From positions 62,001 to 126,000 of IMG/VR virus record IMGVR_UViG_3300050821_013430: a DNA stretch of 64,000 nucleotides, one strand, 5' to 3'. The translations under genes and the position numbers were made by a program. This document shows, piece after piece, positions 13,094 to 42,303 of this stretch (position 1 is its first letter; the number at the start of each line of letters is the position of its first letter). The notes beneath the pieces were generated by a model. It saw only the letters and a list, made by a program, of their open reading frames with translations. It did no database searches and was not told where the DNA came from.

Positions 13094-13124
13094 ATATGTC
13101 TCCAAGTTTGACGTTTTATTATAT

Positions 13125-13985
13125 TCATTCATCACCCAACAGCAAATGCATTCTTTTTTCTTCACTATGTAAAGATAGATCAGCACGCTCCAATGTATCT
13201 ATTATCATTTTAGACAATTCTAATCCACTTCTCCAATCTTTTTTTCCATCAATCAATTGTAAAAACGTTTCAATCGAAGAAGCGAGCGGCAAAGTTCGAT
13301 CAATTTTTACCACTTTCCCATTATGTATCAGTTTGTCTTCTCGTATATCATCATATATAATCGTTTCTTTTCCTCCAAAAACCTCAAAATAACGACTTTT
13401 ATTTTGGGCTCCATTACCAATTTGAGCACTTACTCTGACTCCACCTATATTGAGGTGCAAATCAAATATCTCGCCCTGAGAATGCCACGAAGGCATTCGT
13501 GCCGCATAATCAATTGATGTTTGATTATTTAACAAAGCAAAACACATCGACAGATCGTGAGAACCATAATCAAATAAAGACGAATAATCTCGGAAGGGGC
13601 CGTTTCCATAGCCTCTGGTAAAAATACCATCAATTCGATCCCAAGACAGAACAATTTCTCGTAATTTGAGGAAGGCGGGAGCAAAAATATGTTGATGGTT
13701 GACCAAAATAGGAGCAGAAAACCTATCCAATATTTTTATCTCGTTTAGAGAAAGAGCCAATGGCTTTTCTACCATCACGGGTACATTACGCTCTAAAGCA
13801 TAATGAGCAATATCAATATGAGATTGTGGCGGAGTAGCGATAATCACCCCGTCTGGCTGCTCATCCAATAAAGACTTCCAATTATGTCTAGTTGCAATTT
13901 GCAAAGAGACATCAGGAAAATCAGCAAGAGTAGAGACATAATTTCTACCCCAATGACCATTACCAATAAGTAAGATATTACTCAT
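13125..13985 (-). CDS. Gfo/Idh/MocA-family oxidoreductase
   Basis: IGNGHWG Rossmann motif, IATPPQSH, VEKP. Confidence 0.85.
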   Translation of the reverse strand: MSNILLIGNGHWGRNYVSTLADFPDVSLQIATRHNWKSLLDEQPDGVIIATPPQSHIDIAHYALERNVPVMVEKPLALSLNEIKILDRFSAPILVNHQHIFAPAFLKLREIVLSWDRIDGIFTRGYGNGPFRDYSSLFDYGSHDLSMCFALLNNQTSIDYAARMPSWHSQGEIFDLHLNIGGVRVSAQIGNGAQNKSRYFEVFGGKETIIYDDIREDKLIHNGKVVKIDRTLPLASSIETFLQLIDGKKDWRSGLELSKMIIDTLERADLSLHSEEKRMHLLLGDE

Positions 13986-14928
13986 AACGATTTCTGTATT
14001 CTAGATACCAATTTACACACTCAAAAAGACCTCTATCAAAATCGAATATAGGCCTCCATCCTAATGCCTTGATTTTAGAGCAATCCACCGAATACCTAAA
14101 ATCGTGGCCGGTCCGGTCTTTGATAAAATCAATGGCCGGATTTTCGACCTTCAGGATTTGACTGATTCGCTTCACGACTTCCAAATTGGTCAGCTCCACC
14201 CCAGAGCCAATGTTGTAGGTCTCATTGGCGGGAGCCTTTTCCACGATCTTCATAATGGCCGAGCAGTTGTCCTTGACATAGAGCCACTCCCGCATCTGCT
14301 TGCCCTCTCCGTGAATAGGGATCGGCTTGCCATCCATAATCGATGTGATGACCTTCGGGACCAAGTTGCGAGGGGGTTGGCGGGGCCCGTAGTTATTGCA
14401 GCAGCGCGTGATGTTGTATGGTAGTCCGTGAGTTTGATTAGCGGCGACCACCAACATTTCAGCACAGGCTTTGGAGGCGGAGTATGGGTTTCTGGGTTTG
14501 AGGGGTGAGTGTTCGGTCCAGGACGGATCACCGATCTTGAGTTGGCCGTATATCTCATCGGTTGATATCATAATGAACCGCTCCACTTGATACTTGAGCG
14601 CCAGATCTACCATCACCTGGGTACCCACGATGTTGGAATGAACGAAAGGCTTGGCGCTTCGGATCGAGTCATCCACGAAACTCTCGGCTGCTCCGTGAAT
14701 GACGATGTTGGGCCGTTCCAGAGCAAATACGTTGTCCATAAAAATCTCATCTGCAATATCACCCATATAGAAAGTGTGGCCAGTATTGCGATAGATGTTC
14801 TTGAGGTTGTAGGGGGCGATGATTTTATCAACGCTCGAGAATTTGTAGTCCAGGCGATCATCAAAGACCTTCCTAATAAAGTTGCTGAAGATAAACCCGG
14901 CCGAGCCGGTCACGAGCACGCGTTTCAT
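13978..14928 (-). CDS. rfbB: dTDP-glucose 4,6-dehydratase
   Basis: VTGSAGFI, AAESFVDDS, ISTDEIYG, PYSASKA, NNYGP, DRTGHDFRY. Confidence 0.9.
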   Translation of the reverse strand: MKRVLVTGSAGFIFSNFIRKVFDDRLDYKFSSVDKIIAPYNLKNIYRNTGHTFYMGDIADEIFMDNVFALERPNIVIHGAAESFVDDSIRSAKPFVHSNIVGTQVMVDLALKYQVERFIMISTDEIYGQLKIGDPSWTEHSPLKPRNPYSASKACAEMLVVAANQTHGLPYNITRCCNNYGPRQPPRNLVPKVITSIMDGKPIPIHGEGKQMREWLYVKDNCSAIMKIVEKAPANETYNIGSGVELTNLEVVKRISQILKVENPAIDFIKDRTGHDFRYSVDCSKIKALGWRPIFDFDRGLFECVNWYLEYRNRYE

Positions 14929-15836
14929 TGGCCATCCCATCCTTGCAAAGCGTCCTCAATGGATTTAAGGTAGGACGCGTGATGTTGATTGAAGCCCCAT
15001 TGATAGTAATCCGGCACCGCCTGGCACACCTTCGTTAGAGCATCTTCGGAGGTCATCTTGTTGCATCCGCGAAGAACGGCGTAGGCAAAATGCGGACTTC
15101 GTGAGGCACCAACGTGGCAATGGAGGTAAATGGGCCGATCCGAATGCTGTTGAGCAAACTTGACTGCCTGCCTAACGTAATCGGCAGGAAAAGGATTGCC
15201 ATCATCCTGAACCGGCAGTTCCAAGAGGTTATCGATCTGCTTGTCCTTGTCCGTATGACCATCTACGTTGATCACGGATCCGATACTGAAATCTCTGGTC
15301 AGGTGTTCCCAGTCCTTTTGGTCGCAAATGTTGCCACCCACCAGGAGATGGGGCGCTACCCAATACCTTGCCATCGTTGGATTAGTAGGACTAACGGTAT
15401 TGATGTAGGTTTCTGCCACCCCCACGTTCAGTTCGAGTAGTTGTCGGATAAGATAATCGGCTTTGCCAGCCATTACCTCCGGCTTGCTAAAAAGATGAGT
15501 AGCACCCGCGACTATCATATTGGCGTTATTCTGCTGGATGCCGGAGAAAGTGATGACTGGTATGGATAAGTTCTTGCTTTTCAACCAGTTGAGCAGGTCA
15601 ATGCCATTACCCTGCGGCATATCGTGATCCAAAATGATGACGTCAATCTTGACGCTGCTGATGATAGCCGCGGCTGCGAGGGCACCCGGCACCACGCTGA
15701 ATTGCACCTCGGTCTGGGGCCCAAAAATGCTGGCGAAATGCTCGATAACGCCCTTTTGGCAGTGGAGATCGTCCTCACAAATTAGGACGTGCTTCTGGGG
15801 ATATTTGAGCCGGTTGATATGTCTGAACTGGAACAT
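14925..15836 (-). CDS. Response-regulator receiver domain fused to a dual-specificity phosphatase
   Basis: VLICEDD, ILDHDMPQGNG, ITFSG and SKP receiver motifs, then LHCHVGASRS (CX5R). Confidence 0.8.
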   Translation of the reverse strand: MFQFRHINRLKYPQKHVLICEDDLHCQKGVIEHFASIFGPQTEVQFSVVPGALAAAAIISSVKIDVIILDHDMPQGNGIDLLNWLKSKNLSIPVITFSGIQQNNANMIVAGATHLFSKPEVMAGKADYLIRQLLELNVGVAETYINTVSPTNPTMARYWVAPHLLVGGNICDQKDWEHLTRDFSIGSVINVDGHTDKDKQIDNLLELPVQDDGNPFPADYVRQAVKFAQQHSDRPIYLHCHVGASRSPHFAYAVLRGCNKMTSEDALTKVCQAVPDYYQWGFNQHHASYLKSIEDALQGWDGQ

Positions 15837-17261
15837 TTATGAACCCTTCCTTGTTAGCTCTTCGATTGCGGGAAACCACGGCATGCCGCGATCGATACCA
15901 CCACACGACTGACATCTGGCCCCGCCTATCTTGATGCCATTGAAACTGCCGCTATATTTGGGGTCTTCGATCCAAGGGCCATCGCTACAAGTGCAGGTCA
16001 TGTTCTCGCAATATCGCTGCACCTTCAGCTCCGGCAAAGGCACAATGAAAGTGGGATACCTGACATTTTTGAAATGCTGATACCACTGCTGCTGACACTT
16101 TTCGATTATTGAGTCCGCAAAGTTCCAGGCGAGGATCAATAACACATCCGGCTTGCGTTCCAAAATGGCTTGTGAGGTATAGATGAGAATATGCTTACCG
16201 GGAGTAAATGTTCCTTGTTTCAAGGGAGCATCATCTACCGCGAAATCAATCCATTCTTCTTTGATCCCAAGAGCATACATTAAGGTCGTAGCTTTAGCCG
16301 GGGCGCCGTAGATGGCGATGGATTTATCCTGATCTCTCAGATCTCGGAGTTTTTCACGAAGTTCTAGTCCTAGATACTTGATATTGTGGGCCAGTTGCTT
16401 GACCTTCTTCTCAATGTCTTGTTCTTGTTGCGGCAAATCACCTAGTCCGGCGCTTAATGCACCACGATACCATCTACCAAGGCCGAAATCTTCTTGGCAA
16501 CGAACAAAAACTCGAATTGATCCCCCGTGATTTGGAATTCTTTCGACATCAAACAAATCCAAACCGTGGCCGGTAAAAAATGGGCGCAAGGGCCCTACGG
16601 TATGGTAAGAGCTGTGCTCGTGGTAAATAGTGTCGAATAAGGTATGGTCGCACACATCAGCGAAATAGGACACCTCGAACACGAATACTCCCTGCGGAGC
16701 CAGCAGCTTCTTGACACCCTTGGTAAAGTCAACCAGGTCGGGGCAATGGGCAAACACGTTGTTGGCCACGATCAAATCAAACTGACCGTGTTCCTTGAGC
16801 ATCTTATCGGCATAGGCCTCGGTGAAAAACTCCGTGATGGTCTCGATGCCCTTCTTGTTAGCTTCGTCCGCGATGTTCCGGGCTGGATCGATGCCCATGA
16901 CCTTCATTCCCAGATCCTTGAAGTGCTGCAACATCACTCCGTCGTTGCTGGCAATTTCCAGGATTTTGCTGCCAGGCTTCAGATCAAACTTTTCGACCAT
17001 TGACACTGCATACTTACGAAAATGCTCCACATTGACGGGGGAGGTACCAGCCACATAATGGTAGTGGCGAAAAATCCGCTCCGGATCAATACTCTGATTG
17101 AGCTGGTAGTGCCCACAGGAGGCGCAACAACACACTTGTAGCGGAAAAAGGTCCTGGGGGCTGGGAGAGGACAAAAATTCGTTAGCAAGCGGCGTGGAGC
17201 CTAAATCTAATACCGGTGCGCCGAGGGGGCCCTTGCACAATCTGCACTTATCAGTCTTCAT
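15837..17261 (-). CDS. NDP-hexose C-methyltransferase (SAM-dependent)
   Basis: CRLC..LGSTPLAN..CASC, EIASNDG, NNVFAH, YHEH, HGGSIR, YGAPAKA, LAWNF. Confidence 0.9.
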   Translation of the reverse strand: MKTDKCRLCKGPLGAPVLDLGSTPLANEFLSSPSPQDLFPLQVCCCASCGHYQLNQSIDPERIFRHYHYVAGTSPVNVEHFRKYAVSMVEKFDLKPGSKILEIASNDGVMLQHFKDLGMKVMGIDPARNIADEANKKGIETITEFFTEAYADKMLKEHGQFDLIVANNVFAHCPDLVDFTKGVKKLLAPQGVFVFEVSYFADVCDHTLFDTIYHEHSSYHTVGPLRPFFTGHGLDLFDVERIPNHGGSIRVFVRCQEDFGLGRWYRGALSAGLGDLPQQEQDIEKKVKQLAHNIKYLGLELREKLRDLRDQDKSIAIYGAPAKATTLMYALGIKEEWIDFAVDDAPLKQGTFTPGKHILIYTSQAILERKPDVLLILAWNFADSIIEKCQQQWYQHFKNVRYPTFIVPLPELKVQRYCENMTCTCSDGPWIEDPKYSGSFNGIKIGGARCQSCGGIDRGMPWFPAIEELTRKGS

Positions 17262-17690
17262 CTAAAACTCCTCTCGCACTAAATCGGCTTCGTGATGTTC
17301 GTGGTCCTTGATGCCGTGTCCCAGGGAAATCAACACCGTATCCTCCAGGAATACCGTGCGATGCACGTAGTATGGGCGAGTGAAAACCATCTCACCCGCC
17401 TTGACGACGATCGGCTCTCGATTAGCCTTTTCGGGTGATGTATCCACCGATCGCTCGTAGTATTCCATCGATCCCGATATGACGAAAAGGTAGTGCCAGT
17501 TCTCGTGATGCCAATGATTGCTACGTACCGATCCTGCCTTACTGGTAATGATAGCCACGCTGGTAATAGGTGATAAGAGTAGATTTTGGATGACACCAGT
17601 AGCATTCACAAAGGGCGCGTCCAATGGTACAAGAATATCTGCCGGAAACTCTCCACGACTAACCAAATCTCCATATTCTCTATTGTTCAT
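17262..17690 (-). CDS. Cupin-fold sugar epimerase/isomerase
   Basis: RSNHWH..WHYLFVISG..YVH cupin motifs, within the sugar operon. Confidence 0.7.
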   Translation of the reverse strand: MNNREYGDLVSRGEFPADILVPLDAPFVNATGVIQNLLLSPITSVAIITSKAGSVRSNHWHHENWHYLFVISGSMEYYERSVDTSPEKANREPIVVKAGEMVFTRPYYVHRTVFLEDTVLISLGHGIKDHEHHEADLVREEF

Positions 17691-18652
17691 CTTGCATCCT
17701 TATCTGACTTTACATACCAGTCTATTGTCTTTTTCAGCCCTTCTTGCAGTTCTGTCGTTGCCTCCCAATCCAATAGCTCCTTGGCTCGGCTTGTGTCCAA
17801 AAGCCTTTTTGGCTGACCATCTGAAACACTGCCATCGAATACTACCCTGCCCTGATACTCCGTTAGCTCTTTGATCAGGTGGGTCAGGTTCTTGATGCTA
17901 ATATCTTGTCCTACTCCCAGATTGATTGGTAAGTCGTTGTCAAAACGACTTGCGATTGCTTTGACAAGAACCTCAGCGGTGTCGCCAGCATAGAGAAACT
18001 CCCGAGTGGCATTGCCAGTACCCCAGCATTTGACCTCGGGTGCATTGGTATGCTTGGCATCTATGAACTTACGGATCAATGCCGGAATGACGTGGCTGTT
18101 GGTTAGATCGAAGTGATCGTACGGACCGTACATATTTACTGGAATTAGATGTGCCCCTTTGATACCATATTGGACTCGATATGTTTGCCCCAACATCATC
18201 AGCGTTCGTTTTGCTTGTGCGTATGGGAAATTGGTTTCTTCAGCGGCACCGTTCCAAATATTATCCTCCTTGAAAGGAACTGGACAGTATTTAGGATAGG
18301 CACACACTGAACCTAATGAATAGACATAAGGAACCTTCATCGTTCGTGCTGCTTCATAGACATTGAGTGCCATTTGAGTGTTATCTCGCAGGAAATCAGC
18401 CGGACTGTTCTTATTGGCTAGAATCCCGCCGCACTTCGCGGCCATATGCAGAATAGCAGTAGGTTGATATTGTCGAATGGCCCACCAAATATCGGCACCG
18501 TGATCGCATTCATTGCCGATATTTTGCGACGTTAGAATGTCCAAGTCTTTACTCTTTGGCGCCCAATATTCGATTTTAGCAGCATTCAATAACGGCAAAA
18601 GATGATGTCCGAGAAATCCATTGCCTCCCGTAATCAAAATGCGTTCTTTCAT
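17687..18652 (-). CDS. fcl: GDP-L-fucose synthase-like NDP-sugar epimerase/reductase
   Basis: AAKCGGILAN, GSVCAYPK, YAQAK, NMYGPYD, SHVIPALIRK, WGTGNATREFLY. Confidence 0.8.
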   Translation of the reverse strand: MKERILITGGNGFLGHHLLPLLNAAKIEYWAPKSKDLDILTSQNIGNECDHGADIWWAIRQYQPTAILHMAAKCGGILANKNSPADFLRDNTQMALNVYEAARTMKVPYVYSLGSVCAYPKYCPVPFKEDNIWNGAAEETNFPYAQAKRTLMMLGQTYRVQYGIKGAHLIPVNMYGPYDHFDLTNSHVIPALIRKFIDAKHTNAPEVKCWGTGNATREFLYAGDTAEVLVKAIASRFDNDLPINLGVGQDISIKNLTHLIKELTEYQGRVVFDGSVSDGQPKRLLDTSRAKELLDWEATTELQEGLKKTIDWYVKSDKDAR

Positions 18653-19440
18653 CGTTTCCTCTTGAATAAGTCTATCGTCTTTCTGATACCAGCATCCAAG
18701 GATGTTTGAGCTTCACAAATGAGTGATTTATTCGTAATCACCAAGGAACTGCCACTTTTGGTGCCTCGTACTATCTGGCAGCCGGTATGTTTAGAGACCA
18801 GCTCCGCTACCTCATATATCGAGTTCCACTGCAATGTGCTGGCGTCAAATACGCCTTTATATTCAAATGATAAGTGTAGGGCCCTACAAATATCGTCAAT
18901 ATGAATAAACTGTCTTTTTTCTTGACCATCGGTCATCATTCGTATGATATCATTAGACAATGCTTGATGAACGAAATCAGCAACTACATGGCTCTTGACA
19001 GACTGCGGCTCATAGGCCCCATAAACGTTCCAAAACCGTACCACCCGGCCCCCATTGAGTTGTGTCCAAACCTCACCAAGCCGCTTTAGGACGCCGTAAA
19101 CGGTATCGCAGTCCTCGGCGAGCTGACTGGAAACGAAAACGAAAGGGATATCGATCAGCTGATCCATCGAGTTGGTTAGAATTCTGATATTCCACTCAAG
19201 TTGTTCTTTTTGAGTATTAGGATCATAGAGGTAGTTGGCTCCACCAACTTTGAAGGCTAAAAAATAAACGCGATCAATATTAACCAGGGGTAAGGTGAAA
19301 AATCTGCAATCCTCATGCTCATTTCTGATGATATCGTATTCAATAACATTTTCTCCAAGGTCGCGAAGATAATGGCATAGGTATCGACCGACGAAACCAG
19401 AAGAGCCAAGAACAAGGTTATTCATCTTACTTATGCACAA
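18649..19440 (-). CDS. NAD-dependent epimerase/dehydratase
   Basis: GSSGFVG, YGVLK, NVYG, RQFIHIDD. Confidence 0.85.
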   Translation of the reverse strand: MCISKMNNLVLGSSGFVGRYLCHYLRDLGENVIEYDIIRNEHEDCRFFTLPLVNIDRVYFLAFKVGGANYLYDPNTQKEQLEWNIRILTNSMDQLIDIPFVFVSSQLAEDCDTVYGVLKRLGEVWTQLNGGRVVRFWNVYGAYEPQSVKSHVVADFVHQALSNDIIRMMTDGQEKRQFIHIDDICRALHLSFEYKGVFDASTLQWNSIYEVAELVSKHTGCQIVRGTKSGSSLVITNKSLICEAQTSLDAGIRKTIDLFKRKR

Positions 19441-19441
19441 T

Positions 19442-20275
19442 TTACGGACTTATTGCAATATCGTATCTTGCACTGAGATAACTTTGAACAAGTATCATAT
19501 TACTATAAGCAAGAATGCTGTTATATATGAGCACCTCAACTATTTTACCATTGAGGAAATGGCCTGACATATATTGATTATCGGCGCCCAACCAAACACC
19601 ATCTGTACCAGCACCTACGGAACCAGCTCCTACTGTGCCTGTTAGATTTGGTGTAGTTTTGCTGATACCAATCGCTGAACTTGCGCCATCATATTCGCCA
19701 CGAAATACTTCTGGGTATCCAGTTGCCGATATTGAGGTAGTAAGATTGGTGCCTCCTGCCAAAATAGAATATACCCCATCATTATTGTATAGCCAAGGGT
19801 TTGTTACCGTATCACCACCAACAAATATCTCAGCGCCACCTCCGACGGTTCCATCATCATTAGCAACAACAAAAATGGTATATGGTTGTGCTACTGGTGA
19901 AGCCCAAGTTCCAGTAGACTTCATATATTGAGATAAAGAATCCCTAAAACTAACTGATGGAAAACCGGCATACATATTATCTGAGGCGTTGAATGTTGGA
20001 TTAGCGCTACCACCCGCTCCCACCATATTTTTATTTGAATCACCGGTGCCGCTCTGGTCTGCCCAGCCCGTAACCTGATTACCGGACAATGTAATACCCA
20101 TATCGCTTCGCAACCACAACTGCAGTCCTGAAATGCTGGTTGGTGAGAAAAGTGTTGGTAGCGTTGTAGGCACATACTCAGTGCCATTGAACTGCAATAC
20201 TTGCCCGGTGATTGGTGGCACTGATGAAACTGGAATACCCTGAATCGCTGTGACTCGTTTTTTAACATCGGACAT
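19442..20275 (-). CDS. Virion protein with LamG/concanavalin-A-like domain
   Basis: LQLWLRSD..VTGWADQSG..LNGKIVEVLIYN, with N-terminal AIQG module. Confidence 0.7.
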   Translation of the reverse strand: MSDVKKRVTAIQGIPVSSVPPITGQVLQFNGTEYVPTTLPTLFSPTSISGLQLWLRSDMGITLSGNQVTGWADQSGTGDSNKNMVGAGGSANPTFNASDNMYAGFPSVSFRDSLSQYMKSTGTWASPVAQPYTIFVVANDDGTVGGGAEIFVGGDTVTNPWLYNNDGVYSILAGGTNLTTSISATGYPEVFRGEYDGASSAIGISKTTPNLTGTVGAGSVGAGTDGVWLGADNQYMSGHFLNGKIVEVLIYNSILAYSNMILVQSYLSARYDIAISP

Positions 20276-20286
20276 GTTGTCTCCTT

Positions 20287-21153
20287 TTATACCTTACTAA
20301 GTATATTCCAAATACTACCATTAAATATAACAGTAATTCCGCCAAAATTAGTATTAATTACATAAGTAGAAGCGGCATCAATATTAACTCCACCTCCTGA
20401 TACTGTTAGATTATTAGTGGATGCAATACCAACGGAATCTTTAATTATATAAATATCTCCTGCCGATGGAGATGGCGGTAGTGTAATAGTAAATATTCCT
20501 GATGTCGTATCACCAAGAATAATATAATCATAAGCAGTTGAACGACCATTATTTATGGTATAATCTGATGTAATATTAACTATTTGACTAAATCGTAGTC
20601 CCGTACTATTAAATCTAATATTTTTGCCTGTCAAACCTATTTGGGCAACATCAGGATTAGTGGATGCGTTAAAAGCATCTAATACAATTTCTTGTGCATT
20701 ATCATGCCCATAACCAGTTGTTAAATAGATAGATGCCTGTCCTCCACCATTTTGTGCGCCAGCATCTAGTTGAATATTATTACCACCGGCAGAACTTGAG
20801 GTCGGGGCACAACCACTAAAAATATTAATCGGTCCATTGCCACCGCCTCCAACTTGATCAGTAGATATTGTTAAACCGCTTGTACCATTTGTGCTTTGTA
20901 TTAAAACAGCGCTAGCATCTACAGTACCACTGTTGCCAGTTAAACCTATAACTATTGGATTTGGATATGTTCCAGATAAATCACCTCCGGCGGGCCCATC
21001 TGGTATTCCACTTGGTGTTGGCAATGGTTTAGATTCCCACTCATCATTTGTATTAATCCAAGTCAATACATAACCATCTTCACTCGCGCCTAGTATTTCT
21101 CGTTTAACCTGATTTCCTTGAATTGCATAAACGATTTTTCCGACATCAGACAT
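20287..21153 (-). CDS. Virion fibre/adaptor protein
   Basis: AIQG..DGYVLTW module, GGDLSGTYPNP, C-terminal domain shared with 630..2309. Confidence 0.65.
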   Translation of the reverse strand: MSDVGKIVYAIQGNQVKREILGASEDGYVLTWINTNDEWESKPLPTPSGIPDGPAGGDLSGTYPNPIVIGLTGNSGTVDASAVLIQSTNGTSGLTISTDQVGGGGNGPINIFSGCAPTSSSAGGNNIQLDAGAQNGGGQASIYLTTGYGHDNAQEIVLDAFNASTNPDVAQIGLTGKNIRFNSTGLRFSQIVNITSDYTINNGRSTAYDYIILGDTTSGIFTITLPPSPSAGDIYIIKDSVGIASTNNLTVSGGGVNIDAASTYVINTNFGGITVIFNGSIWNILSKV

Positions 21154-21176
21154 TTTAATCTCCTTATGTTAAATAT

Positions 21177-26283: not shown

Positions 26284-26358
26284 TTCTTTCTACTTTCGGC
26301 TTACTGAGGCTCAACACCGTATATATCGACCTTTCCATATGTTTGACGATGACCAGAA

Positions 26359-29372: not shown

Positions 29373-29418
29373 GTCAAAATGTCGAATTATTCCTATGGCC
29401 CATCTGTTGAAATTTGAG

Positions 29419-30150: not shown

Positions 30151-30194
30151 AGTATTATGTTCCTCTAATCATTTTGTTCTGACTATGCGTATAA

Positions 30195-33100
30195 TCATCC
30201 TATTTGCATTATATTAATTGTCGAGCCTGTCGGACTTATACTTGGAGCAAATGATGATGGCACTACGGCCGGTCCATTATTAACCCAAGATAACCAAGTT
30301 GATATATTAACTCCTGATCCAATAGCTGCTATATATGAATTATCTACTTGTCCATAACCGCTACCACCAATACTAATCGCCGCAGATTGAGATATGGGGG
30401 TTCCAGAGCCTAATAAACCGGTAGCTCCTAAATATTGCATCATCATAATACCGTGCGTTCCAGATGGAACACCAGTATAATTTATACTGGTGTTAATTCT
30501 ATAGTAGCTATAGGTATTAGCAATGTCAGCATTATTGAAAGTTACATAAGAACACCCAGTAGTAACGGTGGTGGCGCCTATATTACCAATACTGATTTGC
30601 TGTCCGCCCCATTGCACTAATCTAAATGGGCCGCTCATTGCACCAGCAACGCTCCAATTGCCCGATGGCACCTGCATACCGGCCGTAGCTTGCCCTTGAT
30701 AAAAGTTACCCATCGGTGTAATGGTGATCTCATTAGGATTAGGTCCGGTGGCCGCTACCAATCCACCTATCAAATTGATATTGTTCGCGATGGCAACCGT
30801 AGCTCCTTGATTGAACCACCACATACCAGTGCCATTGACGCCAGCGGTGCCTGGGGGTCCTGTAACTCCAGTAGCTCCAGCAACACCGCCCGGGGAAACA
30901 AATGCGGTGGCCACAGCGCTTCCTACTGGAATATTACCCACATAACCCAAGTTCTGTAAGCCAACGGTAGGTACACCTGCCGTAGCTACCTGATAATAGC
31001 CTCCACTTGGTATGAAAATAACCTGACCGGCTTGTATCCAATAACCGGAAGGAATTTGTACAGAGATCGCATTAGCAACGCCAGTGGCGGGCTGAGTAAA
31101 GCCATAGTTAGTAGAATAAGCATTAATGCCACCAGCGCCAGTCGACCCATATGTACCTTGTGGGCCGGTTGAACCTTGAGGCCCAAGTGGGCCTGTGGCT
31201 CCCGTTGCTCCTGCAATGCCCCCTGGCGAAATATTACCTGTTGCTACGGCACTACCTACCGGAATGTTTCCTAGATAGCCGAGATTTTGCAGCCCAACCG
31301 TTGGCACACCAGCCGTAGCTACTTGATAGTAACCTCCGCTGGGAATGAAGACGACTTGTCCAACCTGTATCCAGTTACCAGAAGGGATCTGAACTGAAAT
31401 AGTATTGGCCGCACCAGTTGCTGGTTGGGTAAACCCATAATGAGTGGAGTAAGCGTTGATACCGGGAGCGCCAGTAACACCAGTAGCGCCTGCGCCTGGG
31501 CCCGCTCCGCCCGAGGGAACGAAGTTGAGGCCATAAGAGGCATAATAGTTGGTACCATTGAAGTATAGAGAGATGATGTCAACGGCTCCAGTACCAGTTG
31601 ATAAAGTGGGTGGCGTACCACCTACCCATTGAACGTTAGTTGGCCAGGTAACAGTCATAAAACCAGATCCGCCTTGAACTAGACGAAGTAGAAGACTGGA
31701 AACACCAACTGGATTAGTAAAGGTAAAGGTTGGAGAACCATTTAGAGTAATGGTTTGACGACTACCCACGCTCCAGTTGATATTGAATGTGCTACCGCCA
31801 GAATTACCGTTAGAAACCTCCTGCTCGAAATCCAGTGTTTGCAGATTGACAATATCGTGATTCTGAACATTGAGACTATCGCCGATTGCAATATTATTAT
31901 AGCCACTTGGGAAGCCACTATAAACCCCGTAGGATAAGAGATTGATTGAAGTGGCCTGTGGATTGAACGCTGAGAAGATGTTTAGTGGCACTCCAGTTAC
32001 AGCCTGTGGTAGCCTGAAAAGACCGGTAGGAGCAGCAGATCCGACATTGCCACCAAAGTAGAAGAAGACACCGGACGGAACCTGAATGGCTCCAGTCGCA
32101 TCTCCATGCAAGGAGCTAATATACGGAGTGGTAGCGGTAGAACTGGCTCCTTGTAGGTCTCCTGCTGGTAGGTAAATAACACCCGGAGTTGATTGAGAGG
32201 CTAAGGTAACGCCTCCGCCACCGCCACCAGTACCTGGTGGGCCCTGAGGACCGGTAGGTCCTGTAGCACCCGTAACACCAGGGCTGCCTTGCGCTCCCTG
32301 AGGACCTGTTGGACCTGTGACTCCTGTAACACCGGGCGATCCTTGGTTACCTTGAGGACCGGTGGGACCAGTAACTCCTGTAACTCCCGCTACACCTCCT
32401 GGTGAGATAAATCCAGCAGCTACCGCGCTACCTACTGGAATATTGGCGCCTGAATAGCCTAAGTTTTGTAGTGAGAAGGTGGGAACAGAACCGGAGGCGA
32501 CTTGGTAATAACCGCCTGAAGGAATAAAAACGATCTGCCCCGCTTGAATCCAATAGCCGCTTGGAATCTGGATTGCAATATCTGCCCCTATTGCTGGTTG
32601 TGTGAAACCTGCTGTAGTTGAATAAGCATTGATCCCAGGTGCTCCCGTTACACCAGTTACGCCTGGTGATCCTTGATTGCCCTGAGGGCCAGTTGGACCA
32701 GTGGCTCCAGTTACGCCCGGACTTCCTTGGGCACCTTGAGGGCCGGTAGGCCCTGTTGTTCCGGTTATACCAGGAGAACCTTGTGCTCCCTGAGGTCCGG
32801 TCGGACCTGTTACGCCAGTTACACCAGCAATCCCTCCCGGAGAAACAAAGCCCGCAGCCACAGCGCTTCCCACTGGAATATTGACGCCTGAGTATCCTAG
32901 GTTTTGGAATGAGAAGGTAGGGACTGATCCAGAAGCAATAGTGTAGTACCCGCCGGACGGAATGAAAACATACTGACCAATCTGAAGCCACTGACCCGAA
33001 GGAACAGTAAGAGGTATGGCTACACCGACTGCCGGTTGAGTAAAACCGTTGGTGGTGGAATAAGCATTGATTCCTGGAGCGCCCGTTACTCCTGTTGTTC

Positions 33101-36100
33101 CTGCTACTCCCTGTGCTCCTTGAGGTCCGGTAGGACCAGTAACTCCTGTTACACCAGGAGAACCCTGATTACCTTGAGACCCCTGAGGGCCAGTAGGTCC
33201 TGTAGCGCCCGTTACTCCAGGTGATCCTTGATTACCCTGCGGTCCTGTTGGCCCAGTGGAACCAATAGTACCAGTTGCGCCTGTTACTCCGGCAATACCT
33301 CCTGGTGATACAAATGCTGCGGATACCAAACTACCAACTGGAATATTGACTCCTGAATAACCAAGATTCTGCAAACTGAAAGTAGGTACAGAACCAGACG
33401 CTACTTGATAATAACCACCGGATGGAATGAAGACGATCTGATTTGTCTGGATCCAATATCCAGATGGAATCTGAATAGCAATATCAGCTCCTACTGCGGG
33501 TTGAGTAAAGCCTGCCGTAGTAGAATAGGCGTTGATGCCAGGTAATCCGGTTACACCGGTTACTCCAGGAGGACCTTGATTTCCTTGAGGTCCAGTTGGC
33601 CCTGTCGCACCAGTAACTCCAGGAGAACCCTGAATACCCTGATTGCCCTGCGGTCCGGTCGGACCTGTTACGCCAGTTACACCAGGGCTTCCTTGAATGC
33701 CTTGACTACCTTGTGGGCCAGTAGGGCCGGTAGCCCCCGTGACTCCAGGAGAGCCCTGAGCGCCTTGAGGTCCTGTGGGTCCTGTTGTGCCAGTTATGCC
33801 TGGACTACCTTGAGCACCTTGAGGTCCTGTGGGTCCTGTAACACCGGTAACTCCAGCCACTCCGCCAGGAGAAACAAACGAAGCAGATACCAAACTACCA
33901 ACTGGAATATTGGCGCCAGAATAACCAAGGTTCTGCAATGAGAAGGTAGGTACTGCTCCAGATGCAACTTGATAATAGCCTCCGCTTGGGATAAAGACGA
34001 TCTGGTTTGTCTGAATCCAGTAACCACTTGGAATTTGGACAATGATATCTGCACCAATCGCAGGCTGGGTGAATCCGGCGGTGGTTGAATAAGCGTTGAT
34101 CCCTGGCGATCCTGTTACTCCTGTTACACCAGGATTTCCTTGATTGCCTTGCGGCCCTGTGGGTCCCGTTGCGCCTGTTACTCCGGGAGAACCTTGGATG
34201 CCCTGTGAGCCTTGCGGACCGGTGGGTCCTGTGGCTCCAGTTACACCAGGACTACCTTGAATACCCTGTGAGCCCTGGGGCCCCGTTGGTCCGGTTGCTC
34301 CAGTCACTCCAGGAGAACCTTGATTGCCTTGCGGACCTGTCGGTCCAGTAGATCCTATGGTACCGGTTGCTCCTGTTACTCCGGCTATGCCACCAGGTGA
34401 AACAAAAGCAGCAGCAACAGCACTGCCAACAGGAATATTGACTCCAGAGTAACCGAGATTTTGGAATGAGAATGTTGGAACGGAGCCTGAAGCAATCGTA
34501 TAATAGCCCCCACTCGGTATAAAGACATACTGACCAATCTGCATCCATTGCCCACTTGGAACGGTAAGTGGAATAGCAGCTCCCACTGCTGGTTGCGTAA
34601 ATCCATTGGTTGTCGAATATGCATTGATTCCAGGCGCTCCAGTTACACCAGTAACTCCTGGCGAACCCTGATTACCTTGTGGACCAGTAGGGCCTGTGGT
34701 TCCAGTAACACCTGGTGATCCTTGCGCTCCTTGGGGTCCAGTAGGGCCTGTAACTCCTGTAATACCAGGACTACCTTGGGCCCCTTGAGGGCCTGTTGGT
34801 CCTGTATTACCCTGCGGTCCAGTTACTCCTGTAACACCGGCAACTCCACCCGGAGAAATAAAGCTTGCTGCGACGGTACTTCCTACCGGAATGTTGACGC
34901 CAGAGTAACCAAGATTTTGTAGCGAGAATGTTGGAACTGCTCCTGATGCTACAACATAATAACCTGCGGATGGTATAAAAACATATTGGCCAGCTTGGAT
35001 CCAATAGCCACTTGGGATCTGAATAGCGATATCTGAACCCACTGCGGGTTGTGTAAATCCTGCGGTAGTAGAATAAGCGTTGATACCTGGAGCGCCTGTG
35101 ACACCTGTTGCACCAGGTGATCCCTGATTGCCTTGTGGTCCTGTAGGGCCTGTAGTTCCAGTTACACCGGGGCTTCCCTGAGGACCTTGCGGCCCAGTTG
35201 GTCCGGTTTGACCTTGAATACCTTGTACTCCAGTAGCCCCTGTAACACCAGCGATACCACCAGGTGAAACGAAAGCAGCAGATACTGCGCTACCAACAGG
35301 AATGTTGGTTCCCGAATAGCCCAAGTTCTGCAAACTAAAAGTAGGCACAGATCCGGAAGCAACAACATAGTATCCACCGCTCGGAATAAAGACATACTGT
35401 CCGATATTGATCCAGTATCCGCTAGGTATCTGGATCGGTATCGCATTACCTACTGCTGGTTGCGTAAAGCCCTGAGTAGTAGAGTAAGCATTGATGCCGG
35501 GAGCACCAGTAATACCGGTTACGCCTGGGCTTCCCTGATTTCCCTGTGGACCAGTAGGACCTGTTGCTCCAGTGACACCAGGAGAACCCTGAATACCTTG
35601 ACTACCCTGCGGCCCCGTTGGTCCGGTAGCTCCCGTTACTCCGGGCGAACCTTGAATACCCTGAGATCCCTGCGGACCAGTCGGTCCGGTTGCCCCAGTA
35701 ACTCCGGGAGAACCTTGAATGCCCTGTGATCCTTGTGGGCCCGTTACGCCAGGTGAGCCTTGATTACCTTGCGGGCCTGTAGGCCCTGTTGTACCTGTGA
35801 CTCCTGCTACTCCTCCCGGAGAAACAAAACCTGCTGCTACTGCACTACCTACCGGGATATTGACACCAGAGTAGCCCAGATTTTGGATCGAGAATGTAGG
35901 CACTGAGCCCGATGCTATCGTATAGTATCCTCCACTAGGGATAAACACATACTGGCCGATCTGCATCCATTGACCAGATGGAACCTGAATAGGAATAGCG
36001 TTACCAATGGCAGGCTGAGTAAAGCCTTCAGTGGTTGAGTAGGCGTTGATCCCAGGTGCTCCCGTTACTCCTGGACTACCTTGATTTCCTTGCGGGCCAG

Positions 36101-37244
36101 TAGGTCCGGTGGCCCCAGTTACACCGGGAGAACCCTGAGGACCTTGAGGCCCTGTCGGACCAGTAACTCCAGGTGAGCCCTGCGGACCAGCTGAAGGTGA
36201 GCCAGGCCCAATAGGTCCGGTAACGCCTGGCGAGCCTTGAGGGCCTTGAGGGCCAGTTGCCCCCGTTACACCAGGAGAGCCCTGAATGCCCTGAGAGCCG
36301 GTTTGACCTTGAGGCCCTGTTGCTCCGGTTGCTCCTGCTACTCCGCCAGGCGATACGAATGCTGGCGCTATTGCACTTCCAACAGGAATATTGACACCAG
36401 AATACCCAAGGTTTTGCAAACTGAAAGTGGGAACCGCTCCCGATGCTACAACATAGTATCCACCACTTGGAATGAAAACATACTGCCCTATCTGGATCCA
36501 ATATCCACTGGGGATTTGGATTGGTATGTCAGCTCCCACTGCTGGTTGAGTAAATCCTTCGGTAGTAGAATAGGCATTGATTCCACCAACACCGGTAGCT
36601 CCCGTGACTCCTGGTGATCCTTGGTTGCCTTGAGGGCCTGTTGGTCCAGTTGCGCCGGTAACGCCTTGTGGACCTTGAGGCCCTGTCGGGCCGGTTGCAC
36701 CAGGATTACCTTGCGGGCCTGTGGGCCCTGTTGCGCCGGTAACTCCTGGACTGCCCTGATTGCCTTGCGGACCAGTAGGTCCTGTTACTCCTGTAACGCC
36801 AGGAGAGCCTTGCGACCCTTGCGAGCCAGCGGGGCCTGTTGGTCCGGTTGCACCGGTTACTCCAGGCGATCCTTGAATGCCTTGAGAACCGGTTTGTCCT
36901 TGCGGTCCTGTTGGACCTGTGGCTCCGGTAACGCCCTGAATACCTTGCTGACCTTGAGGACCGGTGGGTCCTGTTACACCAGGCGAGCCCTGATTTCCTT
37001 GCGGACCTGTCGGTCCGGTTGCGCCTGTAACTCCGTCCGCGCCCGTTGCTCCCTGAGGTCCGGTGGGACCGGTCGCTCCGGTGACACCAGGAGAGCCTTG
37101 GTTGCCCTGAGGTCCTGTAGGACCGGTGGCTCCGGTTACACCGGGACTGCCTTGAATGCCTTGCGGTCCAATAGAACCAGTAGAACCAATCGGACCGGTA
37201 GGTCCGGTAGCTCCAGGTGCTCCTCTTGCGTACCCTTGGCTCAA
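30195..37244 (-). CDS. Giant collagen-like fibre protein with 11 globular repeats
   Basis: [12 protein letters not shown] triplet tracts alternating with GINAYST..FTQPA..SPGG repeats. TTG start after GAAAGG. Confidence 0.9.
30880..36600 (-). repeat. 11 copies of a roughly 85-aa coding repeat within the giant collagen
   Basis: GINAYSTxxGFTQPA...IPSGxW...FIPSGGYY...QNLGY...SPGG counted 11 times in the translation. Confidence 0.9.
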
Positions 37245-37303
37245 GATTTTGCCTTTCTATTCTTGGCCGATTCAGACATTTTCTTTCTTGATTCTAGGGT
37301 CAT
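37241..37303 (-). pseudogene. 20-aa mini-ORF, NUMOD3-like homing endonuclease remnant
   Basis: [20 protein letters not shown], overlapping the upstream stop (ATGA) and the collagen TTG (TTGA). Confidence 0.45.
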
Positions 37304-37635
37304 GACACTTCAACTCCAAAGATATTGAAAGTCAATAATCCGCTTGCGGATTGAACTCTGACTTCATCTCCTTCGGCTAATGAAATACCGATAGTAGCAA
37401 TGAAAGTATCGTTACCATCCATCGAAAGATCATAATACAGATATTGCTTCAATGTATCGACAGCTCCACCGATAGCGATCGAAACCCGAAAAACAGTGAA
37501 ACCAGGATCAGTATTACAGATAACAACAGAGGATATGGTGGTGCCAATATCTACCGTGTTTGGCACCGTATAGATAGTAGTCAGCGTATTAGCGGCGGGT
37601 TGTGCTTGGGCAAGCACCTTGAGGGAATCGCTCAT
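37300..37635 (-). CDS. Small virion adaptor-type protein
   Basis: KVLAQAQPAANTLTTIYTVP..VICN..FNIFGVE. Confidence 0.6.
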   Translation of the reverse strand: MSDSLKVLAQAQPAANTLTTIYTVPNTVDIGTTISSVVICNTDPGFTVFRVSIAIGGAVDTLKQYLYYDLSMDGNDTFIATIGISLAEGDEVRVQSASGLLTFNIFGVEVS

Positions 37636-37710
37636 ATCATACGGTATGCGATCTTATTGAGATCAGAGAATATCGATTGAAATCGATGTGAAATCAATAG
37701 TTAGAGCTTG

Positions 37711-37932
37711 TTACGCTCCCATCACAAGATACCATCGTAACCAAGAATTAGTACCTGTGCCTGCTGCTCCCGCTGGGCCTTGCGGGCCCGTAGGGCCGAT
37801 GGCTCCCGTCACACCAGGACTTCCTTGCGGTCCTGCGGGCCCTGTAGCCCCCGTGACGCCAGGACTGCCTTGAGGCCCCTGCGGACCCATCGGGCCCGTA
37901 GGACCGGTTATAGGAGGATTAAAAAGAGGCAT
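37711..37932 (-). CDS. Mini-collagen with hydrophobic C-terminal peptide
   Basis: Gly-X-Y tract followed by [11 protein letters not shown]. Confidence 0.75.
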
Positions 37933-42229: not shown

Positions 42230-42260
42230 TTGATCTCCATATGTTTGAGTATGAGAGTAT

Positions 42261-42289: not shown

Positions 42290-42303
42290 GTACCGGCCAA
42301 ATG

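What the first reader, a model, noticed from the sequence alone, without database searches (positions are those of the whole stretch)
13125..37932. Probable phage-encoded system for a self-glycosylated collagen fibre coat
Seen: three Thr/Ser-rich collagen genes sit beside GT2-TPR-GT4 and GT4-GT2 fusions (four GT domains), a methyltransferase and a sugar pathway. Two virion genes (19442, 20287) lie inside the enzyme cluster. Known: GPT-repeat collagens such as spore BclA are O-glycosylated, GT2-TPR enzymes glycosylate proteins, and giant-virus fibrils are glycosylated. Inference: this phage builds an exosporium-like glycan-decorated fibre coat with its own enzymes.
Basis: partly seen in the sequence, partly recalled or inferred. 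Interest (0 to 1): 0.85.

Follow-up and report, generated by a model that had tools for sequence, protein, structure and literature searches.

The report
Megaphage collagen fibres with glycosylation cassette
A giant bacteriophage related to Bacillus phage G carries, as one swappable block, genes for collagen-like fibres next to soluble protein-type sugar-attaching enzymes and a pathway for an unusual methyl-branched sugar, which suggests (but does not prove) that the phage sugar-coats its own fibres.

Summary
On the minus strand of 13125-37932 lie collagen-like genes of 2349, 318 and 73 aa. Downstream lie a GT-A-TPR-GT-B enzyme, a GT4-GT2 fusion, two methyltransferases and a 6-deoxyhexose pathway with a sugar 3-C-methyltransferase. 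No protein in the block has a membrane span.

The window belongs to a ~470 kb megaphage whose capsid protein is 53% identical to that of Bacillus phage G.

The GT-A domain's best solved relatives are protein or peptide glycosyltransferases (GmaR, SunS, ThuS). The whole model resembles TPR-plus-GT-B protein O-glycosyltransferases (SPINDLY, OGT).

In every related megaphage locus that could be resolved, collagen genes and this module are present together or absent together, between the same two flanking genes. The capsid tree interleaves carriers and non-carriers.

Two points limit the interpretation:
- About 46-58 smaller phages carry the same enzyme family with no collagen, usually just after the capsid gene, so collagen is not its general target.
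- Nothing shows a capsid-wide "coat". The fibre's 77-aa bead domain is otherwise found in tail-module proteins of Nodularia phages.

Verdict: partly supported. It is a new variant of phage virion glycosylation, and biochemically untested.

The parts
37712..37932 (-). 73-aa collagen-like ORF (17 GXY triplets). It is either a small collagen-like accessory protein or the detached N-terminus of a collagen gene.
   Evidence: size comparison with SPP1 gp12 from PMC6316719
37300..37635 (-). 111-aa ORF of unknown function. It is followed by a 20-aa NUMOD3-like mini-ORF (37303-37241) that overlaps the TTG start of the giant collagen.
   Evidence: no intron found by Rfam
30195..37244 (-). Giant 'beads-on-a-string' collagen fibre of 2349 aa. 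It has 341 GXY triplets (45% with Thr at Y), 11 copies of a 77-aa beta-barrel domain, a 335-aa central region whose last ~80 residues are one of the 11 bead copies, and a 209-aa C-terminal domain.
29419..30150 (-). 243-aa Ser/Thr-rich protein of unknown function, with no homologue in any fetched locus
28416..29372 (-). 318-aa collagen-like protein (53 GXY triplets) with a 128-aa non-collagen C-terminal domain
26359..28416 (-). 685-aa pectate-lyase-like beta-helix protein (tailspike or depolymerase type)
   Evidence: PF12708, 30.4 bits against a cut-off of 27; weak TSP_Ig-like hit; no PDB sequence hit
23794..26283 (-). GT-A (GT2, DxD at D92/D94/D95) - TPR-like helical repeats (195-414) - GT-B (GT4, E695-x7-E703). 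Putative protein O-glycosyltransferase and the lead enzyme of the cassette.
21707..23797 (-). GT4-GT2 fusion glycosyltransferase of 696 aa. Its start overlaps the stop of the preceding gene.
21177..21758 (-). 193-aa class-I methyltransferase-like protein. In many relatives the equivalent domain is fused to the C-terminus of GT2-TPR-GT4.
20287..21153 (-). 288-aa fibre-like protein carrying the shared N-terminal anchor motif
19442..20275 (-). 277-aa fibre-like protein carrying the shared N-terminal anchor motif
18649..19440 (-). Short SDR (263 aa), a putative NDP-sugar reductase. It has no counterpart in any fetched related locus.
17687..18652 (-). GDP-fucose-synthase-like 3,5-epimerase/4-reductase. 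No close counterpart was found in fetched loci; the only hit was a 26%-identical match in L085.
17262..17690 (-). 142-aa cupin, a putative NDP-ketosugar isomerase or epimerase. Part of the conserved core.
15837..17261 (-). NDP-hexose 3-C-methyltransferase of the TylC3/MtmC/TcaB9 family. Part of the conserved core.
14925..15836 (-). Receiver domain plus dual-specificity phosphatase. Found at the same position in several relatives.
13978..14940 (-). NDP-glucose 4,6-dehydratase (RmlB-like). Part of the conserved core.
13125..13985 (-). GFO/IDH/MocA oxidoreductase, a putative NDP-ketosugar reductase. Part of the conserved core and the last gene of the cassette.
12233..13186 (-). Patatin-like phospholipase. 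The conserved flanking gene that marks one border of the variable locus.
40241..40885 (-). 214-aa protein with a conserved N-terminal 100 aa and a variable C-terminus. Part of the conserved flank on the other (capsid) side; in the window two conserved genes (38573-40228, 37934-38572) lie between it and the first collagen ORF. A possible fibre adaptor (inference).

Best explanation
The region is one allelic cassette at a hypervariable fibre locus of a phage-G-like megaphage. The locus lies between the capsid-side flank (the conserved 214-aa gene at 40241-40885 and two conserved genes after it) and a patatin gene.

The cassette couples collagen-like fibre genes to a fully soluble, cytoplasmic glycosylation machinery.

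Inferred sequence of events:
1. Host NDP-glucose is taken by the phage RmlB-like 4,6-dehydratase. No nucleotidyltransferase is encoded in the cassette.
2. The cupin, the TylC3/MtmC-type 3-C-methyltransferase and the GFO reductase turn the 4-keto intermediate into an NDP-6-deoxy-3-C-methylhexose.
3. In this phage an extra Fcl-like epimerase/reductase and a short SDR probably add a second 6-deoxyhexose.
4. The GT-A-TPR-GT-B enzyme holds a protein substrate on its TPR. The GmaR/SunS-like GT-A domain attaches the first sugar to Ser/Thr and the GT4 domain extends it.
5. The GT4-GT2 fusion and the small methyltransferase finish the glycan.

The most probable acceptors are virion fibre proteins encoded in the same cassette, above all Thr in the GXT triplets of the collagen segments. 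This would be analogous to SgtA acting on BclA3.

Shown: gene content, folds, homologies, synteny and co-occurrence. Inferred: the acceptor, the sugar identity and the position on the virion.
For: Enzyme type:
- The GT-A domain's best solved relatives are all protein or peptide glycosyltransferases: GmaR at 1e-15, then SunS and ThuS.
- The model (pLDDT 91.5) shows GT-A, ten TPR-like helices, then GT-B.
- Foldseek top hits are the TPR+GT-B protein O-glycosyltransferases SPY and OGT, and SunS/ThuS.
- DxD and E695 are invariant in 48 homologues.

Soluble system:
- No membrane spans and no flippase, polymerase or lipid-carrier transferase in the block.

Synteny and co-occurrence:
- The core GT2-TPR-GT4 / GT4 / cupin / 3-C-MT / RmlB / GFO is conserved in dozens of viral loci.
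- In megaphage relatives, collagen genes lie directly upstream on the same strand in L004, L086-089, L095-097, L099, L100, L108 and L164.
- Relatives without the module also lack collagen at the locus: L008, L081, L016, L048.
- The MCP tree interleaves carriers and non-carriers.
- The GT tree needs 3-4 changes of the collagen label, with L133/L139 forming a second collagen-linked clade.

Substrate plausibility:
- Thr occupies 45% of Y positions in the giant collagen.
- Precedent: SgtA, a GT-A enzyme encoded next to bclA3, adds O-GlcNAc to Thr of GPT repeats (PMC7157674).
Against: - There are no biochemical data of any kind.
- About 46-58 loci of smaller phages carry the same enzyme family with no collagen, mostly right after the MCP gene. 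The family therefore has other acceptors, and the collagen link is a derived feature of one or two clades.
- Adjacent genes in a swapped block co-occur for reasons of linkage alone.
- L085, L093, L106 and L111 have close GT homologues (47-49% identity) without collagen within 10 kb.
- Thr-rich GXY repeats are common in bacterial and phage collagens whether or not they are glycosylated (established knowledge).
- The dehydratase scores just under the curated RmlB cut-off, and the cupin has no informative relative. The sugar assignment is therefore tentative.
Confidence: 0.5

Rival explanations
1. The machinery glycosylates other virion proteins: the capsid, a decoration protein, the tail, or the non-collagen fibres at 19442, 20287 and 26359. 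This would resemble mycobacteriophages, where capsid and tail-tube subunits are glycosylated. On this reading the collagen genes are merely neighbours in the same variable structural locus.
For: - In about 35 small-phage loci the gene order is terminase, portal, MCP, a 120-aa protein, then GT2-TPR-GT4, with no collagen.
- A Manatee Spring podovirus places the homologue two genes after its MCP.
- Virion glycosylation of mycobacteriophage capsid and tail tube is cited in PMC12619734.
- The window's cassette also holds three non-collagen fibre-like genes.
Against: - MCPs of carriers and non-carriers are about 85% identical, with no extra Ser/Thr tail.
- Within the megaphage clade the module never appears without collagen genes at the locus.
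- The module is usually separated from the last collagen gene by less than 100 bp.
Confidence: 0.25
2. The enzymes build a free or cell-bound glycan, or alter the host envelope during infection (for example to block superinfection). They do not modify phage proteins.
For: - GT2 and GT4 enzymes and 6-deoxyhexose pathways are typical of cell-wall polysaccharide loci. JGI names the homologues 'glycosyltransferase involved in cell wall biosynthesis'.
- GT4-only relatives occur in many bacterial MAGs.
Against: - No membrane protein, initiating phosphoglycosyltransferase, flippase, polymerase or exporter is in the cassette.
- The full GT-A-TPR-GT-B fusion is almost confined to viral contigs.
- The position is always inside structural modules.
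Confidence: 0.08
3. The glycosyltransferases hypermodify phage DNA bases with a glycan to evade restriction.
For: Multi-GT DNA glycosylation is known in phages (Pyle et al. 2024, as cited in PMC12619734; PMC13326640).
Against: - No hydroxymethylase or other base-modification gene lies in or near the cassette.
- The closest solved relatives of the enzyme act on proteins or peptides, and it carries a TPR domain.
- The cassette is present or absent among phages with nearly identical capsids, and its presence tracks fibre genes.
Confidence: 0.04
4. The GT-A-TPR part acts like SunS or ThuS on a small secreted peptide (a glycocin-type product) rather than on virion proteins.
For: SunS and ThuS are among the best sequence and fold matches.
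Against: - No precursor peptide, leader peptidase or exporter gene was seen.
- The enzyme is fused to a second GT and linked to a deoxysugar pathway, which glycocin loci lack (established knowledge).
Confidence: 0.03

Closest known systems
SgtA / BclA3 of Clostridioides difficile, and BclA of the Bacillus cereus group (spore-surface collagen-like glycoproteins)
   Same: - A Thr-rich GXT collagen-like fibre protein is encoded next to a GT-A-type glycosyltransferase.
- SgtA was shown to add O-GlcNAc to Thr of the collagen repeats (PMC7157674).
- A 6-deoxyhexose pathway and methylated sugars accompany BclA (PMC6947953 abstract).
   Different: - No sequence relationship to SgtA was tested.
- The lead enzyme here is a three-part GT-A-TPR-GT-B protein.
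- The pathway centres on a 3-C-methyltransferase, not on rmlACBD or anthrose genes.
- No BclA-type C1q-like C-terminal domain or exosporium-targeting N-terminus was found.
- The setting is a virion, not a spore.
Mycobacteriophage virion glycosylation (Freeman et al. 2023, known here only through citation in PMC12619734)
   Same: Phage-encoded glycosyltransferases lie among late or structural genes and decorate virion proteins.
   Different: - Their acceptors are the C-termini of capsid and tail-tube subunits, not collagen.
- Homology of the enzymes was not tested.
- No deoxysugar pathway with a C-methyltransferase is known to me there.
- The paper itself could not be read.
GmaR (Listeria flagellin O-GlcNAc transferase) and the SunS/ThuS glycocin S-glycosyltransferases
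   Same: - They are the best solved sequence relatives of the GT-A domain.
- They share the layout of a GT-A domain followed by TPR-like helices that bind the protein or peptide substrate. For SunS/ThuS this rests on the fold match. For GmaR it rests on established knowledge, since only its GT domain (204 aa) is in the PDB hit.
   Different: - Identity is only 13-20% over the aligned parts.
- None of them has a C-terminal GT4 domain.
- Their acceptors are flagellin or Cys of small peptides.
OGT / SPINDLY (TPR + GT-B protein O-glycosyltransferases, GT41)
   Same: The overall TPR-then-GT-B layout is shared. They are the top Foldseek hits (E of 1e-14 to 1e-16).
   Different: - Superposition is poor (rmsd about 22 A), so the domain orientation differs.
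- The GT-B domain on its own matches GT4 enzymes better: MshA and GlgM, with TM of 0.66-0.69.
Glycosylated fibrils of Mimivirus and other giant viruses
   Same: A virus encodes its own sugar-nucleotide pathway and GTs to decorate surface fibres. Giant viruses also encode collagen-like proteins (review PMC9614988).
   Different: Those are eukaryotic viruses with different enzymes and sugars, and no homology was tested. Here the fibre proteins themselves are collagen-like and lie adjacent to the enzymes.
Collagen-like phage structural proteins (SPP1 gp12 capsid accessory protein; prophage tail fibres of E. coli O157)
   Same: GXY triple-helix segments occur in virion accessory or fibre proteins (PMC6316719; PMC3368898).
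   Different: - Those have no associated glycosylation genes.
- The giant protein here alternates 13 collagen segments with 11 beta-barrel beads.

Membership tests
Collagen triple-helix repeat proteins (PF01391) | Long uninterrupted Gly-X-Y repeats | tested here: met
   Pfam E=5e-134 and 2e-23. There are 341, 53 and 17 triplets in the three ORFs.
Collagen triple-helix repeat proteins (PF01391) | Trimeric triple helix actually formed | not testable with these tools
   This needs circular dichroism, electron microscopy or a solved structure.
BclA-type exosporium glycoprotein system | GXT-rich collagen region with a glycosyltransferase encoded beside it | tested here: met
   Thr fills 45% and 34% of Y positions. 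The GT genes start 76 bp after the gene that follows the 318-aa collagen.
BclA-type exosporium glycoprotein system | C1q/TNF-like C-terminal domain and an N-terminal exosporium-targeting motif | tested here: not met
   No Pfam or PDB sequence match for the C-terminal regions. The N-termini are short and unrelated. The fold of the C-terminal domains was not predicted.
BclA-type exosporium glycoprotein system | Complete rhamnose operon rmlACBD | tested here: not met
   Only an RmlB-like gene is present. No RmlA, RmlC or RmlD equivalogs were found in the window genes scanned.
GT2 (GT-A) protein/peptide glycosyltransferases of the GmaR/SunS type | GT-A fold with a DxD motif | tested here: met
   PF00535 E=1.7e-15. 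D92, D94 and D95 are invariant in 48 sequences. The model shows the fold.
GT2 (GT-A) protein/peptide glycosyltransferases of the GmaR/SunS type | Helical (TPR-like) substrate-binding domain after the GT-A domain | tested here: met
   Helices at 195-414. SunS and ThuS align over about 400 columns. TPR Pfam hits occur in homologues.
GT2 (GT-A) protein/peptide glycosylating enzymes of the GmaR/SunS type | Transfers sugar to a protein side chain | not testable with these tools
   This needs an enzyme assay or glycoproteomics.
GT4 retaining glycosyltransferases (GT-B) | Two Rossmann lobes and an E-x7-E motif | tested here: met
   Pfam GT4 and GT1 hits. E695-x7-E703 is present in the window protein. 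E695 is invariant; the second position is E or K across the family. MshA and GlgM give TM of 0.66-0.69.
NDP-hexose 3-C-methyltransferases (TylC3 / MtmC / TcaB9 / KijD1) | Zn-binding N-terminal domain, SAM methyltransferase domain and a specific C-terminal domain | tested here: met
   PF08421, PF13489 and PF08484 all score above their cut-offs. MtmC E=1e-77 and TcaB9 E=1e-58 over 385 residues.
dTDP-glucose 4,6-dehydratase (RmlB, TIGR01181) | Score above the curated equivalog cut-off | tested here: inconclusive
   342.1 bits against a cut-off of 365.1. It is a 4,6-dehydratase, but the nucleotide specificity is open.
Phage virion glycosylation systems (mycobacteriophage type) | Phage-encoded GTs within the structural gene region | tested here: met
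   The cassette lies 5-29 kb downstream of the MCP gene (42382-43401), among fibre genes. The same holds in relatives and small phages.
Phage virion glycosylation systems (mycobacteriophage type) | Glycans demonstrated on virion proteins | not testable with these tools
   No virions are available; the phage is known only from metagenomes.

The most novel reading that the evidence does not exclude
Phage-G-like megaphages, which are widespread in metagenomes, make O-glycosylated collagen fibres. The lead enzyme would be a previously undescribed three-part GT-A-TPR-GT-B protein glycosyltransferase. The donor would be a rare branched sugar (a 6-deoxy-3-C-methylhexose) made by the phage itself. The whole unit would be exchanged as a cassette that sets host range or shields the fibres. 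It would be a bacterial-virus counterpart of both spore BclA glycoproteins and giant-virus glycosylated fibrils.
Probability: 0.4. Interest if true: 0.78.

Novelty: new variant of a known kind. Interest (0 to 1): 0.62.

Why it matters
Phage-encoded virion glycosylation has so far been shown experimentally only for mycobacteriophages, as far as the literature I could search shows.

If this cassette works as inferred, it would add three things:
- A second, unrelated and far more elaborate system.
- A new acceptor class, collagen triple helices, where glycosylated Thr is known to stabilise the helix in other organisms.
- A new enzyme architecture that joins the GmaR/SunS and OGT/SPY ways of recognising proteins.

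The family is large: 867 homologues at E<=1e-10, many on 400-480 kb contigs. The finding would therefore apply to a whole clade of environmental megaphages and to many small phages.

In practical terms, it offers candidate enzymes for glycosylating collagen-like peptides and for making 3-C-methyl sugars. It also marks a hypervariable fibre locus that probably governs host range.

Tried and rejected
- A megablast of 20 kb of the window against GenBank phages found nothing.
- I asked whether a group I intron or homing-endonuclease insertion splits the 73-aa ORF from the giant collagen. Rfam found nothing at gathering threshold, and only chance miRNA hits at E<=1. I left this as unexplained.
- PDB sequence searches for the collagen C-terminal part and the beta-helix protein gave nothing useful. 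The cupin matched only generic cupins.
- The PDB fold search for the 77-aa bead gave only weak matches to the beta-barrel crown of F1-ATPase (E about 0.07), which I rejected as a homology claim. The viral library gave two real hits.
- The promoter/terminator scan was at chance level.
- Phage G itself has no collagen or GT genes beside its MCP.
- The bacterial genome scan found mostly GT4-only relatives and a few MAG contigs that may be phage, so it gave no host and no BclA-like locus.
- The Freeman 2023 paper is not held.
I dropped it and did not send it elsewhere.
- I considered 'coat on the capsid' because the locus is near the MCP. There is no evidence for it, and the tail-module homologues in Nodularia phages point the other way.

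Full report
**What the window is**

All genes of the window run on the minus strand.
- The 339-aa protein at 42382-43401 matches the PHROG major head protein family (E=3e-80). It is 53% identical to the major head protein gp27 of the 497-kb Bacillus phage G.
- The window is identical to parts of two IMG/VR contigs of 221,131 and 472,749 bp. More than 300 IMG/VR stretches encode a capsid protein about 85% identical to it, several on contigs of 200-480 kb.
- The window therefore comes from a phage-G-like megaphage that is known only from metagenomes.
- No tRNA and no Rfam family was found.

**Check of the observation: gene order on the minus strand**
- 37932-37712: a 73-aa collagen-like ORF.
- 37635-37300: a 111-aa ORF.
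- 37303-37241: a 20-aa NUMOD3-like mini-ORF that overlaps the TTG start of the next gene.
- 37244-30195: a 2349-aa collagen protein.
- 30150-29419: a 243-aa unknown protein.
- 29372-28416: a 318-aa collagen protein.
- 28416-26359: a pectate-lyase-like beta-helix protein.
- 26283-23794: GT2-TPR-GT4.
- 23797-21707: GT4-GT2.
- 21758-21177: a small methyltransferase.
- 21153-20287 and 20275-19442: two fibre-like proteins.
- 19440-18649: a short SDR.
- 18652-17687: a fucose-synthase-like epimerase/reductase.
- 17690-17262: a cupin.
- 17261-15837: a sugar 3-C-methyltransferase.
- 15836-14925: a receiver-phosphatase protein.
- 14940-13978: an RmlB-like dehydratase.
- 13985-13125: a GFO/IDH/MocA oxidoreductase.
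- 13186-12233: a patatin-like lipase, the flanking gene.

Many neighbouring genes overlap by a few bases or abut, which fits co-expression. The promoter/terminator scan was uninformative.

- The third collagen 'gene' is only 73 aa.
- There are two methyltransferases.
- Three further genes (the receiver-phosphatase, the beta-helix protein and the 243-aa unknown) lie in the block.
- The 'virion' label of 19442 and 20287 rests on weak PHROG hits. Both do share a 45-aa N-terminal motif with the fibre-like protein at 44710-45555 (43-44% identity).

**The fibres**
- The giant protein has 341 GXY triplets in 13 segments. Thr fills 45% of Y positions. GVT, GPQ, GPT, GSP and GAT are the commonest triplets.
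- Between the segments lie 11 copies of a 77-aa domain.
- AlphaFold models the domain as a small beta-barrel (pLDDT 83).
- It has no significant match in the PDB.
- It does match two viral proteins at E about 1e-5.
- By tblastn, the only isolated phages with this domain infect Nodularia and Aphanizomenon. There a 1227-aa protein with four copies lies in the tail module and is followed by a ConA-like lectin gene, with no glycosyltransferase nearby.
- This points to a fibre-shaft role and, if anything, a tail location. It shows that the domain itself does not need a glycosylation module.

**The lead enzyme**
- By sequence, the N-terminal GT2 domain is closest among solved structures to GmaR (the Listeria flagellin O-GlcNAc transferase, E=1e-15). 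The peptide S-glycosyltransferases SunS and ThuS come next (NCBIfam SunS hit).
- An AlphaFold model built on 48 homologues is confident (mean pLDDT 91.5). It shows GT-A (1-190), about ten helices (195-414), a short linker and GT-B (437-792).
- The best Foldseek matches are SPINDLY and OGT, which are TPR+GT-B protein O-glycosyltransferases, and SunS/ThuS. The GT-B domain alone matches GT4 enzymes such as MshA best.
- DxD (D92, D94, D95) and E695 of the E-x7-E motif are invariant.
- All closest characterised relatives of the GT-A-TPR part act on proteins or peptides.
- None of the proteins from 11483 to 41603 has a membrane span by a hydropathy scan. No flippase, polymerase or lipid-carrier transferase was detected.
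- The system is therefore soluble and cytoplasmic, which is where virions assemble.

**The sugar pathway**
- The dehydratase scores 342 bits on the dTDP-glucose 4,6-dehydratase model, against a cut-off of 365.
- The methyltransferase has all three domains of the sugar C-methyltransferases. It matches MtmC (E=1e-77), TcaB9 and KijD1.
- Together with the cupin and the GFO oxidoreductase, these four genes form a conserved core.
- By established knowledge of TylC3-type pathways, the expected product is an NDP-6-deoxy-3-C-methylhexose. This is an inference.
- The Fcl-like enzyme (GDP-fucose synthase, E=2e-55) and the short SDR have no close counterpart in any fetched locus. They probably add a second 6-deoxyhexose.
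- No nucleotidyltransferase is present in the window, so a host NDP-hexose pool is presumably used.

**Relatives and the co-occurrence test**
- A search with an alignment of three homologues returned 79 viral loci with full-length GT2-TPR-GT4. The large protein database holds 867 homologues at E<=1e-10. Many are on 400-480 kb contigs, many are fused to a C-terminal methyltransferase, and some are interrupted by inteins.
- Downstream synteny is conserved widely: optional methyltransferase, GT4, cupin, 3-C-MT, optional receiver-phosphatase, RmlB, GFO.
- In megaphage relatives, collagen genes lie immediately upstream on the same strand. This holds for L004, L086-L089, L095-L097, L099, L100, L108 and L164, often less than 100 bp from the GT start.
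- L096, L097 and L164 show the full arrangement: the conserved 237- and 214-aa genes that follow the capsid gene, then collagens, the GT module and patatin.
- In capsid-anchored relatives that reach patatin without the module (L008, L081, L016, L048), collagen is also absent.
- I saw no resolvable case of collagen without the module. Most collagen-bearing loci are cut by contig ends, so that class could not be sampled well.
- On the capsid tree, carriers (window, L047, L079, L080) and non-carriers (L081, L082, L008, L031, L048, L016) are interleaved. The cassette has therefore been gained, lost or exchanged several times as one unit.

**Limits on the collagen link**
- On a tree of the GT-A-TPR part, the collagen-linked loci fall in one derived clade (13 of 18 rows) plus the separate pair L133/L139. 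At least 3-4 label changes are needed.
- The other 46 rows have no collagen.
- In about 35 of 58 such small-phage loci the order is terminase, portal-like protein, a 301-aa MCP, a 120-aa protein, then GT2-TPR-GT4 and further GTs. An annotated 42.6-kb podovirus from Manatee Spring has the same order.
- High-GC phages (L093, L106, L111) place the enzyme near Gly-rich tail-fibre-like genes.
- The family is thus a general phage enzyme of structural modules. Collagen is at most the acceptor in one or two clades.
- Full-length fusions are nearly absent from bacterial genomes.

**Mechanism and rivals**
- The best-supported reading is that the cassette couples fibre genes with machinery that O-glycosylates virion proteins in the cytoplasm. 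The Thr-rich collagen segments are the most likely acceptors. This parallels SgtA, which adds O-GlcNAc to Thr of the GPT repeats of BclA3 and is encoded beside it (PMC7157674).
- I give this 0.5.
- The main rival (0.25) is that other virion proteins are the acceptors and that collagen is only linked, as the small-phage contexts suggest.
- Host-envelope modification (0.08), DNA glycosylation (0.04) and a glycocin-like peptide target (0.03) fit the gene content and position poorly.

**Comparison with known systems and novelty**
- My literature searches found no description of collagen genes coupled to glycosylation genes in phages.
- Known neighbours are mycobacteriophage virion glycosylation (cited in PMC12619734), giant-virus fibril glycosylation (PMC9614988), spore BclA/BclA3 glycoproteins, and unglycosylated collagen-like phage proteins such as SPP1 gp12 (PMC6316719).
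- The cassette is best rated as a new variant of a known kind (virus-encoded virion glycosylation). What is new is the enzyme architecture, a probable new acceptor class and a rare branched sugar.

**Verdict**
- Observation: confirmed.
- Interpretation: partly supported.
- Interest: 0.62.

Noticed in passing
window 5313-6548, 7983-9014, 41636-42310; L008, L059, L067: The window is dense in homing endonucleases: two LAGLIDADG genes and one HNH gene. Relatives carry up to six HNH copies around the capsid gene.
   Followed up: partly
P0080; L095, L096, L099, L106, L108, L111, L112 (GT gene): Several homologues of GT2-TPR-GT4 are interrupted. P0080 carries Hint/intein and LAGLIDADG Pfam domains, and tblastn hits in these loci are split by 0.2-1 kb gaps at about residue 415-435, the linker between TPR and GT4.
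   Followed up: partly
window 14925-15836; L164 16138-17052; L095, L099, L112: A response-regulator receiver domain fused to a dual-specificity phosphatase sits inside the sugar operon, between the C-methyltransferase and RmlB. It holds this position in several relatives. Its role is unknown; it might regulate the pathway or dephosphorylate a sugar phosphate or a protein.
   Followed up: no
window 37241-37303 and 37244: The giant collagen has only a TTG start and no N-terminal non-collagen domain. A 20-aa ORF rich in Lys/Ser ([20 protein letters not shown]), which resembles a NUMOD3 motif of homing endonucleases, ends on top of that start. Giant collagens of relatives begin instead with MSK(I/V)NA.QIKGVPSGS. 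This may be the scar of an endonuclease insertion.
   Followed up: partly
window 37712-37932: The 73-aa collagen ORF is similar in size and layout to SPP1 gp12, a 64-aa collagen-like capsid accessory protein. It could be a small decoration protein rather than a gene fragment.
   Followed up: no
window 30864-36593 (11 copies); L217 9511-13191: The 77-aa beta-barrel bead of the giant collagen is shared with tail-module proteins of Nodularia and Aphanizomenon cyanophages. The virion protein at 38573-40228 has its best isolate homologues in Synechococcus myoviruses. This is a possible hint of a cyanobacterial host or of gene exchange with cyanophages.
   Followed up: partly
window 19442-20275, 20287-21153, 44710-45555: Three proteins share an N-terminal motif (MSDV..V.AIQG..V....G.VL....W.P.PLP) but have unrelated C-termini. 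This looks like a common virion-attachment module for alternative fibres.
   Followed up: partly
window 1-64000: G+C content varies from 34% to 55% along the window. The collagen and glycosyltransferase part (24-38 kb) is 46-55% G+C, while the flanks are 36-43%.
   Followed up: no
window 12233-13186: A patatin-like phospholipase gene (Pfam E=1e-30) is the conserved border of the variable fibre locus in many relatives. Its function in a phage is unknown.
   Followed up: no
window 54743-58393: A 1216-aa protein has a head-maturation-protease-like segment at residues 101-215 (PHROG E=7e-15). It may be a large prohead protease or scaffold fusion.
   Followed up: no
L114-L160 (small phage loci): A conserved basic protein of about 120 aa lies between the MCP gene and GT2-TPR-GT4 in 24 small-phage loci. 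It has no PHROG hit and is a candidate partner or acceptor of the enzyme in those phages.
   Followed up: partly
window 43556-44716 (+): This is the only long ORF on the plus strand (386 aa). It overlaps minus-strand ORFs beside the capsid gene and was not analysed.
   Followed up: no
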